64,000 nucleotides of DNA from the IMG/VR virus record IMGVR_UViG_3300034072_002211, positions 213,445-277,444 of that record, one strand, 5' to 3'. The translations under genes were made by a program, and so were the position numbers. Under the pieces are notes generated by a model. That model worked only from the letters and a program-made list of their open reading frames with translations. It was not told the origin of the DNA and made no database searches. Positions 45,808-52,061 of this stretch are shown piece after piece (position 1 is the stretch's first letter; the number at the start of each line of letters is the position of its first letter).

Positions 45808-46503
45808 TCACGCATAGTAGAAGCTGCCAGCGTAGTTGTTGCCGCCGGTGCGGATCGAGAGAATCGAGGCCAGCCCGATCGAGCGCACGATGATCTGGTT
45901 CTCGGCCTTCAGACCGCCCTGGATGTTGGCGCCCTCCTTGAGCTCCTTCTTCTCGAAGCCCTGGATGTCGTCCTCGGCGATCGGCTGACCGTCCAGGAAG
46001 TATTCGACCTCGCCGGCGCGCAGGAAGATCGTGTCCAGGTAATAGTCGGCGTGGACGTTGCCCTTCTTCACGTGCTGGATGAACGGGCTGTTGGGGATGC
46101 GCTCACCCCACTTGCGAGCCGACACTTCGAACCGCTCCTCGGCCGCTTCCTTGCGCTCGGCCTCGCCGGCGATCAGCGCCGCTTCGATCTTCTCCGAAAG
46201 CGCGTCGAGTTCGTCGGCGCTCAGGATGTCGACCAGCAGGCCCTTGCCCTCGTTGGCCTTCGCGGTCGCCTCAGCGAGAAGCTCGCCCGCGATTGCGTTG
46301 CGGACCATGTTCTGGTAGGTGTTGGTGTTCTTGTTCTGGGCGATCAGGACGGTCGAACCGGTCACGCGCTTGGTCACACGACCCTGCATCGGGTTGCCCT
46401 TGCCACCCTTCAGCGGAACCACCGTCTCCATGTCGAGACCGATGAAGCTGACGCCGCGGAGTGCTGCGAGGACCGTCTTCACGTTGTGCATCTGGGTAGC
46501 CAT
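45808..46503 (-). CDS. hypothetical protein
   Basis: Promoter/RBS cassette, strong codon bias. Confidence 0.8.
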   Translation of the reverse strand: MATQMHNVKTVLAALRGVSFIGLDMETVVPLKGGKGNPMQGRVTKRVTGSTVLIAQNKNTNTYQNMVRNAIAGELLAEATAKANEGKGLLVDILSADELDALSEKIEAALIAGEAERKEAAEERFEVSARKWGERIPNSPFIQHVKKGNVHADYYLDTIFLRAGEVEYFLDGQPIAEDDIQGFEKKELKEGANIQGGLKAENQIIVRSIGLASILSIRTGGNNYAGSFYYA

Positions 46504-46561
46504 CTTTTCGATCTCCTTTGTGTTTGCCTATGTCCTCTTTCTATACAGAATAGGTGAGGCG

Positions 46562-46792
46562 TCAACCAGAATTCTTAGGTCTGGTGAAGATTTTGGCAAG
46601 AAAGTTTTTGGGACAGTCGGGGTGACGCATCACGTTGTAGCCGTAACGACCGCCGAACTTCTGCTTCACGTAGCGACGGGCGAGGCGCTTGGTCATCAGG
46701 CCAGATGCGGCCTCAATACCATTGTCAACGTAATACCAGCCACCCTTCAGGGGGTTACGATAGTGCTGGTGATCAGCAATCCGTTTCGACAC
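46562..46792 (-). CDS. hypothetical basic protein
   Basis: GGAGG RBS before GTG 46792. Confidence 0.6.
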   Translation of the reverse strand: MSKRIADHQHYRNPLKGGWYYVDNGIEAASGLMTKRLARRYVKQKFGGRYGYNVMRHPDCPKNFLAKIFTRPKNSG

Positions 46793-46852
46793 TCTAGCCT
46801 CCTGTTTTACTGCGGCGCAGCATAAACCTAAAGGAGGTATCGTCAACCGATA

Positions 46853-46927
46853 TGGTGACCCCAACGGGACTCGAACCCGTGCTGCCGACGTGAAAGGCCG
46901 GTGTCCTAACCGCTAGACGATGGGGCC
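46853..46927 (-). tRNA. tRNA-Glu(UUC)
   Basis: Cloverleaf, loop CTTTCAC, CCA. Confidence 0.95.
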
Positions 46928-46939
46928 ACTTGACTCACA

Positions 46940-48262
46940 TTATGTGACGCGGACCTTATCGTCAAGATATCGCTGACCCATATCCAACTCACTTAGGTAG
47001 TGGCAGTTGAGCATATAGGGGCGAAGAACCTCTGGAATCATGACGTCATCGGTCGTCTGGTAATTCTCCAGAACCGCAACCAAAGTGCGACCAACCGCCA
47101 AGCCAGAGCCATTTAGCGTGTGGGCGTAGAACGTCTCGCCATTGACCTTATAGCGGGTGTTCATACGACGCGCTTGGAAGTCGCCGCAGTTCGAGACGCT
47201 GCTGATCTCGCGGTAGGTGTTCTGGCCAGGAAGCCAGACCTCGATGTCGTAGGTCTTCTGTGCGCTGAACCCCATGTCGCCCGCGCACAATAGCATCGTG
47301 CGATAGGTCAGGTCCAACTTGGCCAGGATCTGCTCCGCGGCGTTGAGCATATAGTCATGCTCATGAGCACTCTGCGAAGGCTCACAGACAGTCACGAGTT
47401 CGACCTTTTGGAACTGATGCTGTCGGATAAGCCCGCGCGTGTCTCGGCCCGCAGAGCCCGCCTCTGAGCGATAGCAATCGGTGAGAGCCACGTAGCGATG
47501 CCGCCCACCCAAAAGGATCTGATCCGCATGAATGTTAGTCAGGCTGACTTCAGCCGTGGGGATCAGGAACTGAGTGGGTTCACTTGCTCCATCCTCATCA
47601 GCAATACCAAAGAGATCCTCTTTGAACTTGGGCAGTTGCCCCGTTCCGTAAAGAGCTTCCTCGTTGACGATGGTGGGAGGGATGACCTCACGGTAGCCGC
47701 GCTTGATCTGTTCATCCAGCATGAACTGTCCGAGAGCACGATGTAGTCGAGCCACCGGACCCTGAAGCATTGAGAAGCGCGAGCCGCTGATCTTTGCCGC
47801 CGCGTCAAAACCCAGATCGACTTGATCCAGTTCATAATGCGGTGTGCCATCCCTTGCGCCGACCTTGCCCCAGCGACGGACTTCCACGTTACTGGTCTCG
47901 TCCGTGCCATCTGGCACATCAGCCGCAGGCACGTTGGGACACATGATCAGGAATGCCTCGAGCATCTCTTCAGCGTGAGTTGCCTGAGCAGCCCACATTG
48001 TTTCATTTTGCTTGAGAAGCTTCACCAACTCCTTGAGGGCGTCAGCTGAAGCAGTATTACCCTCCTTCATGGCTTTGCCAATTTCCTGACTCTTGGCCTT
48101 GATTAGGCTGCGAGTGTCCTGAAGCCTCGTGAGCGCATCGCTACGGCGGCTTGCGAACTGCTGGATCTTGTCGATGTGGGGATCGTGCCCGCGGCGCTTC
48201 ATAGCAGCCACGAACTCATCCGGCTTAGCCAGGATGCCCTTGACGTCAAAGTGATACTTCAT
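46940..48262 (-). CDS. serS: seryl-tRNA synthetase
   Basis: GTGQLPKF, PTAEV, CYRSEAG, HQFQKVE, YREISS, HTLNGSGLAVGR. Confidence 0.97.
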   Translation of the reverse strand: MKYHFDVKGILAKPDEFVAAMKRRGHDPHIDKIQQFASRRSDALTRLQDTRSLIKAKSQEIGKAMKEGNTASADALKELVKLLKQNETMWAAQATHAEEMLEAFLIMCPNVPAADVPDGTDETSNVEVRRWGKVGARDGTPHYELDQVDLGFDAAAKISGSRFSMLQGPVARLHRALGQFMLDEQIKRGYREVIPPTIVNEEALYGTGQLPKFKEDLFGIADEDGASEPTQFLIPTAEVSLTNIHADQILLGGRHRYVALTDCYRSEAGSAGRDTRGLIRQHQFQKVELVTVCEPSQSAHEHDYMLNAAEQILAKLDLTYRTMLLCAGDMGFSAQKTYDIEVWLPGQNTYREISSVSNCGDFQARRMNTRYKVNGETFYAHTLNGSGLAVGRTLVAVLENYQTTDDVMIPEVLRPYMLNCHYLSELDMGQRYLDDKVRVT

Positions 48263-48339
48263 AGTGCCAGCTTGCTTCCAAATTGGAATAGAGTCAACCA
48301 TTCATGGCGAAGCCCCGGAGCGTCCTCCGGGGCTTGCTC

Positions 48340-48576
48340 TTACTTCACGAAGTTGGGCTGACCTTCCTTCACGGTCCAAGTAAGCTGGATCCAACCCGCT
48401 GGAATGTAGTGCGACTTACCGTCGGCGCTGAAGATCCGATGACCTCCCGAGTCGCTGACGCTGAGCTGCTCGGGGTTCTGAATCTTCACGAAACCCTTGC
48501 TGCCGAAGTTGTAGACGCGTTCAGCCTCGCTGCTGATATCAGTGAACTTGAGGCCGCTTTCATTCTTGAATGCCAT
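48340..48576 (-). CDS. conserved hypothetical phage protein
   Basis: GGAGA RBS; flanked by terminator hairpins. Confidence 0.75.
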   Translation of the reverse strand: MAFKNESGLKFTDISSEAERVYNFGSKGFVKIQNPEQLSVSDSGGHRIFSADGKSHYIPAGWIQLTWTVKEGQPNFVK

Positions 48577-48653
48577 AGTAATCTCCTATTCTAGTAATCC
48601 CGTAGGACACCAGAGTTTAACAGAATAGGAGACTGTGGGTCAGTATTCATGGC

Positions 48654-48683
48654 GAAACCCAGACCGTTTCTGGTCTGGGTCTC
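48654..48683 (-). terminator. terminator hairpin downstream of GOLLD-like RNA
   Basis: GAAACCCAGACC/GGTCTGGGTCTC. Confidence 0.6.
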
Positions 48684-48699
48684 ATAATGTGGTCACCCT

Positions 48700-49735
48700 G
48701 AGAATGTCGGGTGACCGTCCCGGTCTCTGCGGATTATTCCCTGGATCCTACTCCAGGTATTCCCGCTCACTCCATCACCCTTGCGGGTGTAACCGGTCGT
48801 GCCGCCGTTTTTAACGTCAGGCAGTAGACGTGTCACCATATGCTTTTCGACAGTTTCCACCACACCTGCCTTCGGGGCAGTTAAGGCTTGCGGGCCCTAT
48901 ATGGCTTTCTCTATCAACAACGTCTGGATTGGGTACCAGCTCGCCGCCCTAGTTAGCTTGCGCCCCAGGGATTAGGCACTTTCGAGGTTTCCCTCATACA
49001 CATGGCCGAGTCAGGCTTTCCGTTTTTGACAGCAATGTCCAATATGCTATTACCTGCTAGGAGGTAACCCAGAGAGAAGTGCTGACTCAGTAGTTCCAAG
49101 GCCTTTTGAACCTCAGAATGCTACACTCCTCGTATCGTTCGGCTTGCGGGCCTACTAAATCGGTTTACAGGACTTGTCTGGCTTTTTACACCAACCAAAC
49201 CCTTTGACCTGCCATGAGCCCTAGGCGCGACCCTCGGACAACATGACTACCTCTTGCCACTCGATAGTAAACCTGTTTGAGTAGAGGACGCTGGGGTTAC
49301 AAGGCCCCATTCACCGGCCGCTCGTCGCCACCGGGATTATCGTGCTTTCGCACGGCAGTCGTTCTCAGGTCGTCCTACCTACTGCCACTGCTCCTTGGGA
49401 GAGCTTGACAGTCCCTCTTTTGGAGGGCAGGTGAGGATGCGTGTATTGATCCGAACCGAAGCCCGGACGGCTGGGGATGGGTCCCTTCACCACTTACTTG
49501 GGTTACCCCAAGCTACCACCACACGCGGTAATCTCTTGAAACTTTCGAGTCTCCAACTTAACACCGAAGTGTTTCGCCGTCAACTAAAAAGTTTCCGATC
49601 GATCCCTCTGCGGCGCCACACTCCCCTCGACCAGCTATCTCTGCTTCACTTAGACTGAGGATCCTTTCGGAAACCCCAGGCCTTGTTCTGCTCCTGCTGA
49701 CCTTCGAGGTGTGTAGCACCGCGTTGGTCTCATCG
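48700..49735 (-). ncRNA. GOLLD-like giant ornate RNA, ~1030 nt
   Basis: ORF-free; TTGACG promoter at 49757-49762; many GCAA/GAAA/CAAAAG hairpins; 3' motifs CGAAAGTGCCTA, CCGCAAG..TTAA, GACCGGTT, GGAATAATCC match my recollection of GOLLD. Confidence 0.7.
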
Positions 49736-49784
49736 TTCTATGTTCAACCAGTGTCTGCGTCAACAACAAAAATGCCATCCCGCA

Positions 49785-49968
49785 AACTTTTTTCTCCTCC
49801 AGGAGAAAACCAGGGTCCATAGACGTTTTGGGCCCCCAAGAGAGTTGAATCTCCTGGGGACCCATCGTGGGAGTTTCCTCCTACGTCCCTCTGCGTCTGC
49901 TCCGGTTCGAGTGTCTGGCTCACGAAGTCCAGCTGACCTTACCTTAGCGTCTGCGTTGGTTCATAACA
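49785..49968 (-). ncRNA. small RNA paralogous to the 5' end of the giant RNA
   Basis: Own TTGACG promoter; four collinear shared blocks. Confidence 0.6.
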
Positions 49969-50034
49969 TCTAGCTTTGCGACCCACAGGACGTCAACAAC
50001 CCTTTTTCAAAGAACTGTGGACAACTCTGTGAGA

Positions 50035-50845
50035 GATGCCATGGGCCCGACACCGAAGTGCCGAGCCCACGAAATGTAATGTGCTTGCCTGTGAAAAACA
50101 AGCTTTACACTGGTGTGTTCACCGAGCCGAGATCAACAGAACGCTGAGGCGCTTGGCCAATGGAACCGTTGTCTTGTGTGGTAGTGGCAGGCGAAGCAAT
50201 GGCGCCGTTGTCGCCGAACAGGAATTTGAATGGTCGGAACAAAAGCTTGCCTTGACCGGACAGCTTGTGGAGCGAGAGTCTAATCATGCTACTATTTATG
50301 CTGATAGGTTTAGAGCTCCTGGAGCCGAAACCCCAGGAGCTCAACCAGTTGACCGAAGTCTCTTGGTATTAGAGTAGGTTTCCAGCATAGGTCCAAAGAC
50401 CACTAAGTTGGTTCCTTGCTCTAACGTCGGTTTAGGGGATAGCTAACCGAAATCAACTATCCCCAACCGACAACAAGCCGAAGCCTGCTGTGGTCTCTGT
50501 GCCAGTGTCTGGAGGTTAGCCGAAGCCACACCATCGCAGTCTTTACACAAAGCCGGTTCTGGGACCCTAGTAGGCCGAAGCTTTCCAGGGTCCCAACCGA
50601 GCAAACCGAAGTTTGCTGGCTTTTGTGTAGGGTTCTGCTGTTGCTATGATCGGGCCCGAAAGCCGTCTCAGGGAGTTCAGCAGTCCTTTCACAAAACTCG
50701 GGTTTAGACCAGCTGGGTGTTCATCCGAAGATTACTAGCGCCAGCTGGTCAACCGATGAAAACCGAAGTCTTCATGGTCTCGAAAGTGTTTTGCCGCTGA
50801 GAACAAAACCGAAGTTCTGCGTCATCATTAGCATCTGCGCTTCCG
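50035..50845 (-). ncRNA. ~800-nt RNA with four tandem UUCG-capped structural repeats
   Basis: About 11 c(UUCG)g or UUUCG hairpins; repeated GGTTG..CTAAACC helix; G-U pairs favour the minus strand. Confidence 0.65.
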
Positions 50846-50911
50846 ATGCTCGCTATGTATGTGACCCGTCCGTGCCGCGCAAGAACTTTTTACAGGACAA
50901 TTACGATTTTG

Positions 50912-50932
50912 TGTGAATAAGATTGTGGATAA
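50912..50932. promoter_or_regulatory. two tandem DnaA boxes
   Basis: TGTGAATAA 50912-50920 and TGTGGATAA 50924-50932; another TTATTCACA at 51303-51311. Confidence 0.5.
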
Positions 50933-50933
50933 C

Positions 50934-51284
50934 TTAGGACGGATCCGTGAAGACCCAGCCTGACTGGCTTGCTCTCTCGACGAGCATTTCGGAGAATCGC
51001 TCCATGACCTCATCTCCGTCCATGTTACAAGGCCAGTGGGCATCAGCATATTCCAGCCCGATAGCATCCATGAGATAGCCGCGCTCATATGTGTCGAGCG
51101 AGGGCGGACCCCATTTGAGAATCAGCGAGCCGCTATAGCCGGTAATGAGAAGACGCATCAGCCGAGGATGCTTCATAATGATCGCTGCGAGCAACGCTCG
51201 ATTGGGCGCGATCAATCCACGCTCTTTGAGGGTGTTGTCACACACCTCCAGGTGCTGGGCGCTCAACGTGGATAATCGCGGCAT
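50934..51284 (-). CDS. hypothetical protein
   Basis: ORF with promoter. Confidence 0.65.
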   Translation of the reverse strand: MPRLSTLSAQHLEVCDNTLKERGLIAPNRALLAAIIMKHPRLMRLLITGYSGSLILKWGPPSLDTYERGYLMDAIGLEYADAHWPCNMDGDEVMERFSEMLVERASQSGWVFTDPS

Positions 51285-51641
51285 CCCTGTTACCTTTTCC
51301 AGTTATTCACAGTTTGTGGTAACATAGGTGGAGAGGCTGTCAACCAGGAATGTCGTCCGGGGCAGGTTGCCCTACCGGCGGCATGGACGGCCATCCTTCC
51401 ACCCCCTCGCGGGCCGGACGTGCTCCCCCGCCGACCCGGGTCGCAAGCGTAATCGGCGGGTTAGATGCTATCTGCTAGAAACCACCGCAACAAAATATGC
51501 GTAAAACCACGTAGCGCGCTCGCAAGGAAACGACCCCGACTTTTTTATCGTCGGGGTCGCCTCTGCAATGGTTCGTTGCTATCTCAGGGAGGTCGGATAG
51601 CAGAAGTGCTATTAAGCGTGACGCGCTTTAGCGTCAAGCGT

Positions 51642-52061
51642 TCACTTCTTGAAATCTGTCCCCGTCCGGCACCCGCGCTGGCCGCCCTTACCGTCAGGGC
51701 GAGGAATGAACACCAGTGCCATGCCGGTCTTATATGAGGAGTCTTCCTTTTCGAGGAACTCACAGCCCGTGGCCTTGTCCCTGTAGATGTAGACTCCGGC
51801 GTCTGCCTCGGACCCCACGACCTCGAAAGGATAGCTGGCTCGTTCTGCTGCTTCGTCAGCCGCCTGCTGGTTCATCATATCCGATGAACTCTGGTCGAGC
51901 TCTTCCTCGGTCATGTTGCCCGTCGGTGACTGGGCGTTGCCCAGCAGCTCTACCTCTTCCTGAGGCAAGAGGGTAGCTTGATCGATCGGCTGGACCGGGT
52001 CGGGTTGCTTGTTACAAGCCGCCAGAGCTACCAGGCCAGCGAGAACAACGATCTTCTTCAT
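51642..52061 (-). CDS. lipoprotein
   Basis: LAAC lipobox; YRDKATGCEFL. Confidence 0.75.
   Translation of the reverse strand: MKKIVVLAGLVALAACNKQPDPVQPIDQATLLPQEEVELLGNAQSPTGNMTEEELDQSSSDMMNQQAADEAAERASYPFEVVGSEADAGVYIYRDKATGCEFLEKEDSSYKTGMALVFIPRPDGKGGQRGCRTGTDFKK

What the first reader, a model, noticed from the sequence alone, without database searches (positions are those of the whole stretch)
49600..49968. A 180-nt RNA that is a miniature paralog of the giant RNA's 5' domain
Seen: four collinear blocks are shared: ACCAACGC, AAGGTCAGC, GGAGCAGA and CGCAGAGGGA (plus-strand 49954/49721, 49932/49696, 49896/49687, 49886/49603). Different hairpins are inserted between them, and each copy has its own TTGACG promoter. 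Inference: a conserved RNA core that exists both free and fused to GOLLD, perhaps a cage cap, cargo or regulator.
Basis: partly seen in the sequence, partly recalled or inferred. Interest (0 to 1): 0.7.

Follow-up and report, generated by a model that had tools for sequence, protein, structure and literature searches.

The report
Two distinct RNAs beside phage GOLLD
The stretch holds two real but different folded RNA elements next to a giant phage RNA (GOLLD): a hairpin at the front of the GOLLD transcript, and a separate three-hairpin RNA. The short sequence blocks they share are a quirk of this one genome, not a conserved common core.

Summary
All four blocks are exact, collinear matches on the minus strand. 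Their chain is the best of 3438 segment pairs in the window, but ordinary local alignment is not significant (P about 0.1). In eight related huge-phage genomes the paralogy fails.

- **Conservation:** blocks 3 and 4 occur in the small element only in this window. Block 1 occurs in 4 of 8 genomes. Covariance models of the two elements never detect each other.
- **Structure:** the blocks sit in different structural contexts in the two elements.

Both elements are nonetheless genuine conserved structured RNAs.

- **Leader (49729-49595):** a hairpin extension 5' of the GOLLD domain, behind a conserved TTGACG-17-TAGAAC promoter. An 11-bp covarying helix joins its 5' strand to the sequence at which near-identical GOLLD contigs from three RNA libraries end (49621/49619/49612). 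This suggests cleavage there.
- **Unit 1 (49983-49822):** three covarying hairpins. It always accompanies an upstream four-module RNA, is separated from GOLLD by gene insertions in three relatives, and is absent from one relative that keeps leader and GOLLD. Its expression was not detected.

Neither element matches an Rfam family.

The parts
48695..49133 (-). GOLLD conserved 3' domain
   Evidence: Rfam RF02032, full model 1-416, 143.7 bits (gathering score 150), E 4e-39. Matching copies in relatives score 149.6-171 bits.
49130..49602 (-). GOLLD 5' domain, closed by helix 49602-49597 with 49136-49130
   Evidence: RNAalifold on 9 genomes (A7): 56 of 99 pairs show compensatory changes. The closing helix has two covarying pairs (U-A/A-U and C-G/A-U).
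49603..49621 (-). 5' tail of the abundant GOLLD RNA. It holds the 3' strand of helix Ha (49620-49610) and block 4 (49612-49603).
   Evidence: Contigs from three independent RNA runs end at 49621, 49619 and 49612, with no loose ends beyond. Ha pairing is shown.
49622..49729 (-). Leader: transcript start to the inferred cut. It holds block 1 (49728-49721), the Ha 5' strand (49722-49712), helix H1 (49702-49696 with 49635-49629, including block 2), block 3 (49694-49687), an inner GNRA hairpin, and the junction 49628-49621.
   Evidence: Alignment A4 of 9 genomes: 98.3% of cells paired, 10 pairs with changes on both sides, 0 of 500 shuffles as good, slid controls 31-47%. MFE z-score -4.35. Model R1 also finds an untrained copy in L144 at 41 bits.
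49735..49763 (-). Promoter-like site of leader plus GOLLD: TTGACG (49763-49758), 17-nt spacer, TAGAAC (49740-49735)
   Evidence: Hexamers and spacing are kept in all relatives (TTGACG or TTGATT, 17 nt, TAGAAC, TATAAC or TATAAG), including those with insertions upstream. The simple scan tool did not list it.
49822..49983 (-).
   Evidence: Alignment A5 of 9 genomes: 84.9% of cells paired, 15 pairs with changes on both sides, 0 of 500 shuffles as good. MFE z-score -3.47. Model R2 finds one copy in the 277-kb record.
49967..49996 (-). Promoter-like site of unit 1: TTGACG (49996-49991), 18-nt spacer holding the invariant GGTCGC, weak -10 TAGATG (49972-49967)
   Evidence: A -35-like hexamer is kept in 5 of 8 genomes and the -10 is poor. 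L003 and L002 instead have TTGCTT-17-TAATAC and TTGAAC-17-TATTAC, 70-90 nt upstream of GGTCGC. Function not shown.
49555..49583 (-). Third sigma70-like site, inside the mature GOLLD RNA (TTGACG, 17 nt, TAAGTT), with a cUUCGg hairpin (49573-49560) in its spacer
   Evidence: Kept in the eight relatives that carry unit 1; L144 lacks the -35 hexamer (A3, A7). The hairpin pairs covary and use G-U. It lies inside the RNA contigs.
50307..50780 (-). Upstream four-module structured RNA. Modules at 50780-50701, 50623-50555, 50494-50429 and 50370-50307; promoter-like TTGCGC-17-TACATA at 50882-50854.
   Evidence: Model R3 finds exactly four modules here, two of them untrained (33-67 bits), and four in each of six relatives. 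Unit 1 follows the array 50-324 nt later in every case.
48654..48683 (-). Conserved terminator-like hairpin after GOLLD
   Evidence: Inverted repeat I16. It is also present in L002 and L003.

Best explanation
The 369-nt stretch covers two unrelated parts of a 2.3-kb non-coding RNA island on the minus strand of a huge phage. Related contigs are 315-500 kb; the island sits beside a seryl-tRNA synthetase gene and 20 tRNA genes. Part A (49729-49595) is the promoter-proximal 5' extension of the GOLLD primary transcript. It is a long hairpin of about 130 nt. Its closing 11-bp helix Ha pairs the start of the transcript (ACCAAC then GCGGUGCUACA) with UGUGGCGCCGC, which is followed by AGAGG. That second strand is the 5' end of the abundant GOLLD RNA. 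I infer that the precursor is cut in the 8-nt junction 49628-49621. This would release a leader of about 105 nt, which either stays annealed through Ha or is degraded. The mature GOLLD would then carry an 18-19-nt tail in front of the helix that closes its 5' domain. Part B (49983-49822) is a separate element of about 165 nt with three hairpins. It belongs with the upstream four-module RNA, not with GOLLD, and is probably made from its own weak promoter. The four shared blocks are mostly specific to this genome and do not mark a conserved common core. Shown: the structures, their conservation, the gene order and the RNA contig ends. Inferred: transcription starts, the cleavage, the fate of the leader and any function.
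For: The GOLLD call rests. Leader structure and covariation. The promoter is conserved in all relatives. RNA contigs from three different studies end at 49621, 49619 and 49612, with nothing at 49678-50900; X3 was rechecked at 80% likeness. The GOLLD 5' domain is closed by 49602-49597 with 49136-49130, so the leader lies outside it. Unit 1 structure. Three relatives carry insertions between unit 1 and the leader promoter: a T5orf172 gene in L146, a PAS-HisKA gene in L139, and about 300 nt in L143. L144 has leader plus GOLLD but neither unit 1 nor modules. The two models never cross-detect. The blocks are not conserved in unit 1 of the relatives.
Against: Logan contigs give no read-level 5' ends, and the ends fall where conserved sequence meets variable sequence. 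The junction sequence is not conserved and no nuclease or ribozyme motif was found. Most RNA libraries lose fragments of about 100-170 nt, so absence of the leader and unit 1 is weak evidence. The block chain is still the highest in the window. L136 and L137 share an 11-mer, GAGACCAACGC, between unit 1 and the leader, so some local sequence exchange or a shared 5' motif cannot be excluded. The promoter scan tool reported none of the three sites.
Confidence: 0.6

Rival explanations
1. One reading: unit 1 and the leader are paralogs sharing a conserved RNA core (ACCAACGC, AAGGTCAGC, GGAGCAGA, CGCAGAGGGA) that exists both free and fused to GOLLD.
For: The four exact collinear blocks never arose in 2000 shuffles and form the top-ranked pair in the window. 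L136 and L137 share GAGACCAACGC, and L146 keeps ACCAACG, in unit 1. In the window, the MFE fold of unit 1 places ACCAAC-GC opposite GC-AGAGG, as in the leader.
Against: Blocks 3 and 4 are window-only. L136 and L137 have GGUGCUGCGGUCAAGGGU there, 10 of 18 identical. The chain score in relatives is 0-20. The reciprocal model searches fail. The flank duplex in unit 1 is no better than shuffled (z -0.8 in the window, mean -1.0). In unit 1 blocks 3 and 4 are contiguous, while in the leader they lie 74 nt apart, which simple gene conversion would not produce. Unit 1 co-occurs with the modular RNA, not with GOLLD.
Confidence: 0.1
2. Unit 1 is not a separate small RNA. It is the 3'-terminal domain, or a degenerate fifth repeat, of one transcript of about 1 kb that begins at the promoter near 50850 and contains the four modules.
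For: Unit 1 follows the module array in all seven genomes where the array is visible, and is absent where the array is absent. The unit 1 model gives weak, same-strand, full-length hits on the module regions: window 15.3 and 12.9 bits, L143 23.8 bits at E 1.8e-5, and also L002, L137 and L003. The invariant GGTCGC sits inside the supposed promoter spacer. No intrinsic terminator was found between the array and unit 1.
Against: The module model R3 does not detect unit 1. The spacer between module 4 and unit 1 varies from 50 to 324 nt and is not conserved. A -35-like hexamer is kept in 5 of 8 genomes, and L003 and L002 have good promoters 70-90 nt upstream of GGTCGC.
Confidence: 0.3
3. The leader is never cut off. 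GOLLD here is a single RNA of 1.03-1.08 kb whose first hairpin is unit 2, and the contig ends at 49612-49621 are assembly effects at a conserved/variable boundary.
For: Helix Ha needs both strands and is under strong selection. The contig ends coincide with the start of the conserved block (A3). Contig depth is a flat mean and cannot show a local drop.
Against: Three runs from different studies, at depths 6-378, end within 10 nt of each other. There are no continuing contigs or loose ends, although the first 65 nt of the leader are 85% or more conserved and would be laid even at 80% likeness.
Confidence: 0.25
4. GOLLD is transcribed from the third, internal sigma70-like site (49583-49555). The leader would then be an independent upstream small RNA of about 180 nt.
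For: TTGACR-17-TAAAGT, TATAAC or TAAGTT is kept in the eight relatives that carry unit 1, with an extended-10-like TG in several; L144 lacks the -35 hexamer (A3, A7). The length from about 49548 to 48695 fits an 850-nt GOLLD.
Against: RNA contigs run 65-75 nt upstream of that start at the same contig depth, even in a 6x run. The spacer hairpin covaries using G-U pairs, so it is selected as RNA. The domain-closing helix at 49602-49597 lies upstream of this start.
Confidence: 0.1

Closest known systems
GOLLD RNA (Rfam RF02032; cryo-EM nanocages, PMC12286853)
   Same: The adjacent RNA is a GOLLD: a full-length match to the conserved 3' domain, a separately closed 5' domain of about 470 nt, and a phage context with tRNA genes. 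The literature describes a variable 5' region forming the cage cap (PMC12286853, PMC12990946).
   Different: The Rfam model and the GOLLD papers I read describe neither a promoter-proximal hairpin lying 5' of the domain closure nor a processed 5' end. The leader is absent from the phiCbK GOLLD locus. The window copy scores just under the gathering score.
Precursor leaders and processing stems of stable RNAs (rRNA and tRNA 5' leaders) and two-piece permuted tmRNA (background knowledge)
   Same: A structured 5' leader is transcribed with a stable RNA, base-pairs with what becomes its mature end, and is separated by an endonucleolytic cut. In two-piece tmRNA the pieces stay annealed.
   Different: No nuclease site or motif was identified. 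Ha is only 11 bp, short for RNase III. The cut is inferred from contig ends alone.
ROOL and other large ornate phage RNAs near tRNA islands
   Same: Unit 1 and the four-module RNA are conserved, heavily structured, non-coding, and encoded in a phage tRNA/aaRS region next to GOLLD.
   Different: No match to ROOL or any other of the 4227 Rfam families at E up to 10. The tandem four-module design matches no Rfam family, and the GOLLD papers I read do not mention it.

Membership tests
GOLLD (RF02032), for the neighbouring giant RNA | Full-length match to the covariance model of the conserved 3' domain | tested here: met
   Model positions 1-416, E 4e-39, 143.7 bits. This is 6 bits under the curated cut-off of 150. 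Matching copies in relatives score 149.6-171.1 bits.
GOLLD (RF02032) | A large RNA of more than 800 nt with a separately folded 5' domain | tested here: met
   A closing helix and 56 covarying pairs in the 5' domain. A single 785-nt RNA contig spans 48831-49621.
GOLLD (RF02032) | Encoded in a phage or prophage near tRNA genes | tested here: met
   An IMG/VR record of 277 kb, 20 tRNA genes in the window, and a SerRS gene next door.
GOLLD (RF02032) | Homo-oligomeric nanocage assembly | not testable with these tools
   Needs cryo-EM or mass photometry.
   R1 gives no hit on unit 1 and R2 gives no hit on the leader, in the window (filters off; R1 at E up to 10, R2 at E up to 5) and in the relatives' loci (default filters, E up to 1).
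Unit 1 as a paralog of the GOLLD leader | The shared blocks are conserved in homologs of both elements | tested here: not met
   In the leader, blocks 1, 2 and 4 are nearly invariant and block 3 is less so (A4). In unit 1, block 1 is in 4 of 8 genomes, block 2 is kept only as part of hp1, and blocks 3 and 4 occur in the window alone.
Unit 1 as a paralog of the GOLLD leader | The shared blocks take equivalent positions in the two folds | tested here: not met
   Leader: blocks 1 and 4 flank helix Ha, and block 2 is the 5' strand of H1. Unit 1: block 2 lies in a local 4-bp hairpin. A clamp-like pairing of the flanks is no better than shuffled.
Unit 1 as a further copy of the upstream module | Detected by the module covariance model | tested here: not met
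   R3 finds four modules and gives no hit on unit 1 at E up to 5.
Unit 1 as a further copy of the upstream module | Reverse detection, and co-occurrence with the module array | tested here: inconclusive
   R2 gives weak full-length hits on module regions in five genomes; the best is 23.8 bits at E 1.8e-5. Co-occurrence is strict in 7 of 7 genomes.
Any described RNA family, including self-cleaving ribozymes, riboswitches and Y RNA | A match to an Rfam 15 model | tested here: not met
   cmscan of 46000-52000 at E up to 10 gives only GOLLD, one tRNA and noise.
   The leader promoter is kept in all relatives. The unit 1 site is weak and kept in 5 of 8. The scan tool lists none. No start-site data exist.

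The most novel reading that the evidence does not exclude
GOLLD in this huge-phage clade may be a natural two-piece RNA. After the cut at about 49621, the 105-nt leader would stay annealed to the 5' tail of GOLLD through the 11-bp helix Ha. Each protomer of the cage would then carry a second, separate RNA subunit, making a hetero-oligomeric RNA assembly. The neighbouring unit 1 and four-module RNAs would be further partners or cargo.
Probability: 0.15. Interest if true: 0.75.

Novelty: new variant of a known kind. Interest (0 to 1): 0.42.

Why it matters
GOLLD forms RNA-only nanocages of unknown function, and the papers I read say nothing about how it is made. A conserved, covarying 5' leader that pairs with the mature 5' end and appears to be cut off gives a concrete handle on its biogenesis. 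It can be tested by RACE, in vitro transcription, and cryo-EM with and without the leader. The locus also shows that this GOLLD clade travels with two more undescribed structured RNAs: unit 1 and a four-module RNA. Its near-identical relatives were found in RNA libraries from root, soil, leaf litter and gut. The specific paralog idea should not be carried forward.

Tried and rejected
- **Phage collection search:** blastn of 48600-50900 against the phage collection found nothing.
- **IMG/VR pattern scans:** the 16-mer and 14-mer patterns gave mostly chance hits. Only two related contigs passed a blastn check.
- **Metagenome and genome scans:** gapped and plain patterns both returned zero. Relatives were instead reached through SerRS homologs.
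- **Long-range pairing:** a 14-nt complement between the leader (49718-49705) and the first helix of the GOLLD 3' domain (I7) was dropped, because it is not kept in L002 or L003.
- **Local hairpin GGUGC...GCAC in the leader:** dropped in favour of the long-range helix Ha, which covaries.
- **Unit 1 as a fifth module:** not confirmed by R3.
- **A stem enclosing hp1 of unit 1:** only weakly favoured (mean z -1.0).
- **Third 'TTGAC...GACCAAC' site at G000:C1:26232:** this is an ordinary mRNA promoter.
- **phiCbK GOLLD locus:** it has no leader homolog.
- **Weinberg 2009 paper:** not held in the library.

Full report
**Context.** The window is the last 64 kb of a 277-kb IMG/VR virus record. It carries 20 tRNA genes on the minus strand. 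A seryl-tRNA synthetase gene lies at 46940-48301 on the minus strand. Upstream of that gene lies a gene-free stretch of about 2.3 kb. The Rfam GOLLD model, which covers only the conserved 3' domain, matches 48695-49133(-) over its full length. The score is 143.7 bits at E 4e-39, 6 bits under the gathering score, so the default scan missed it. All RNA features discussed here are on the minus strand.

**Observation.** The four blocks are exact and collinear at the stated places; the first is at 49953, not 49954. TTGACG precedes each copy, at 49996-49991 and 49763-49758. A third TTGACG lies at 49583-49578. A collinear chain of four exact matches of 8 nt or more (35 nt in total) never arose in 2000 dinucleotide shuffles, where the maximum was 28. 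Gapped local alignment is not significant, with P about 0.1. Among 3438 real adjacent segment pairs of the window this pair ranks first at 35, followed by 32 and 27.

**Relatives.** DNA searches of the phage, genome and metagenome collections gave nothing. Two IMG/VR contigs of about 460 kb came from the SerRS gene. Eight more loci came from SerRS homologs. L002, L003 (with its near-duplicates L141 and L142), L136, L137, L139, L143, L144 and L146 carry the same island.

**The 49729-49595 part (leader).**
- A promoter-like site, TTGACG-17-TAGAAC, is kept in all relatives.
- The RNA that follows folds into a long hairpin. Helix Ha (49722-49712 with 49620-49610) has 11 bp and four covarying pairs. 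Helix H1 (49702-49696 with 49635-49629) has 7 bp and three covarying pairs. Inside lies a hairpin with a GNRA loop.
- On nine genomes, 98.3% of cells pair, against 31-47% when the partners are slid. Ten pairs change on both sides, and 0 of 500 shuffles do as well.
- Model R1 finds an untrained, more divergent copy in front of the L144 GOLLD, with further compensatory changes in Ha. It finds none at the phiCbK GOLLD locus.
- In this element, the end of block 1 together with the next nine bases pairs with the eleven bases that end inside block 4. Block 2 is the 5' strand of H1.

**Relation to GOLLD.** An alignment of the region from 49625 to 49130 in nine genomes gives a well-supported fold, with 56 of 99 pairs showing compensatory changes. 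Its closing helix joins 49602-49597 to 49136-49130 and has two covarying pairs. The 5' domain proper is therefore about 470 nt, close to the 420 nt of the solved env-38 GOLLD (PMC12286853). The leader lies outside it as a 5' extension, not inside "the 5' domain".

**RNA evidence.** Near-identical GOLLD sequence, mostly 95-100% alike, is present in RNA libraries from root, soil, leaf litter and gut.
- Three contigs from different studies end at 49621 (785 nt long, word depth 378), 49619 and 49612. No continuing contigs or loose ends follow.
- Nothing lies on 49678-50900 in these runs; X3 was rechecked at 80% likeness.
- That position is the first base of the 3' strand of Ha.
- I infer a cut in the junction 49628-49621. 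The junction sequence is not conserved, and no ribozyme or other Rfam family matches, so the agent is unknown.
- Two caveats apply. Contigs are not read ends. A 105-nt leader would be lost from most libraries, so it could still exist annealed to GOLLD.
- Only two low-depth contigs, probably DNA, cross the border between unit 1 and the leader.

**The 49983-49822 part (unit 1).** This is a genuine conserved structure.
- It has an invariant GGTCGC.
- Hairpin hp1 has a 4-bp stem with two compensatory changes and an almost invariant 10-nt loop.
- Hairpins hp2 and hp3 vary in sequence and covary.
- Overall, 15 pairs change on both sides and 0 of 500 shuffles do as well. The MFE z-score is -3.47.
- The 277-kb record holds one copy.
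- In L146 a T5orf172-type gene lies between unit 1 and the leader promoter. In L139 a PAS-HisKA gene lies there, and in L143 about 300 nt.
- L144 has leader plus GOLLD without unit 1.
- Unit 1 always follows an upstream RNA made of four tandem modules. Model R3 finds exactly four modules in the window and in six relatives.
- R2 gives weak full-length hits on those module regions. R3 does not detect unit 1.

**Paralogy test.**
- R1 never detects unit 1 and R2 never detects the leader.
- In unit 1 of the relatives, ACCAACG occurs in 4 of 8 genomes; in L136 and L137 it appears as GAGACCAACGC, the same 11-mer as in the leader.
- GGUCAGC is kept only as part of hp1.
- GGAGCAGA and CGCAGAGGGA occur only in the window. 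L136 and L137 have a diverged version there, 10 of 18 identical.
- The chain score in relatives is 0-20.
- In the window the unit 1 MFE fold does place ACCAAC-GC opposite GC-AGAGG, as in the leader. That flank pairing is no better than shuffled (z -0.8; mean over genomes -1.0).

**Literature.** The GOLLD cryo-EM paper and a 2026 review describe a conserved 3' domain and a variable 5' domain (P1-P13). They mention tRNAs embedded in the linker. They describe no leader, no processing and no companion RNAs.

**Verdict.** The blocks exist, but the paralog reading is not supported. What is there is a GOLLD precursor leader, probably cleaved, and a separate three-hairpin RNA tied to a four-module RNA. 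Neither matches an Rfam family.

Noticed in passing
window 50307-50882 (-): An undescribed structured RNA built from four tandem modules. Each module is a small cUUCGg hairpin, then GGUUGGG, a variable stem, and CCCUAAACC. A promoter-like TTGCGC-17-TACATA precedes the array. There are exactly four modules in the window and in six relatives, and no Rfam match.
   Followed up: partly
window 49555-49583 (-): A near-consensus sigma70-like site (TTGACG-17-TAAGTT; TTGACA-17-TAAAGT in relatives) lies inside the mature GOLLD RNA. A covarying cUUCGg hairpin sits in its spacer. Whether it acts as a promoter, as RNA structure, or both is unresolved.
   Followed up: partly
window 48723-49621: GOLLD sequence mostly 95-100% identical to this subsurface-derived phage turns up in RNA libraries from root, soil, leaf litter and gut, in one at word depth 378. 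The flanking island is not seen in them.
   Followed up: partly
L146:1197-2558; L139:346-1884; L143:3620-3930: The gap between unit 1 and the leader promoter is an insertion hot spot. It holds a T5orf172/MUG113-type gene in L146, a PAS-HisKA-receiver gene in L139, and about 300 nt in L143.
   Followed up: partly
window 46940-48301 (-): A phage-encoded seryl-tRNA synthetase. Its nearest cellular relatives are Sphingomonadaceae, at about 56% identity, which hints at the host. Several relatives carry a class I aminoacyl-tRNA synthetase gene directly upstream of it.
   Followed up: partly
window 49997-50306: A non-conserved spacer between the module array and unit 1, 170-320 nt long in the close relatives. 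GC skew is reversed here, and a 113-aa ORF lies on the + strand (50036-50377). Not examined.
   Followed up: no
window 49886-49962 (-): An internal direct repeat within unit 1: GAACCAACGCAGACGCUAAGG and GAACCGGAGCAGACGCAGAGG, 16 of 21 identical, flanking hp1. Relative to L136 the window has an extra AGACGC. This suggests small local duplications created part of the block pattern.
   Followed up: partly
L147 (Caulobacter phage phiCbK 102500-106500): The phiCbK GOLLD has a tRNA-Gly embedded in its 3' domain. A permuted tmRNA lies on the opposite strand just upstream. There is no homolog of the leader.
   Followed up: no
window 48695-49133 (-): This GOLLD scores 143.7 bits against a gathering score of 150, so standard Rfam annotation would miss it. 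L003 also falls just under, at 149.6 bits.
   Followed up: yes
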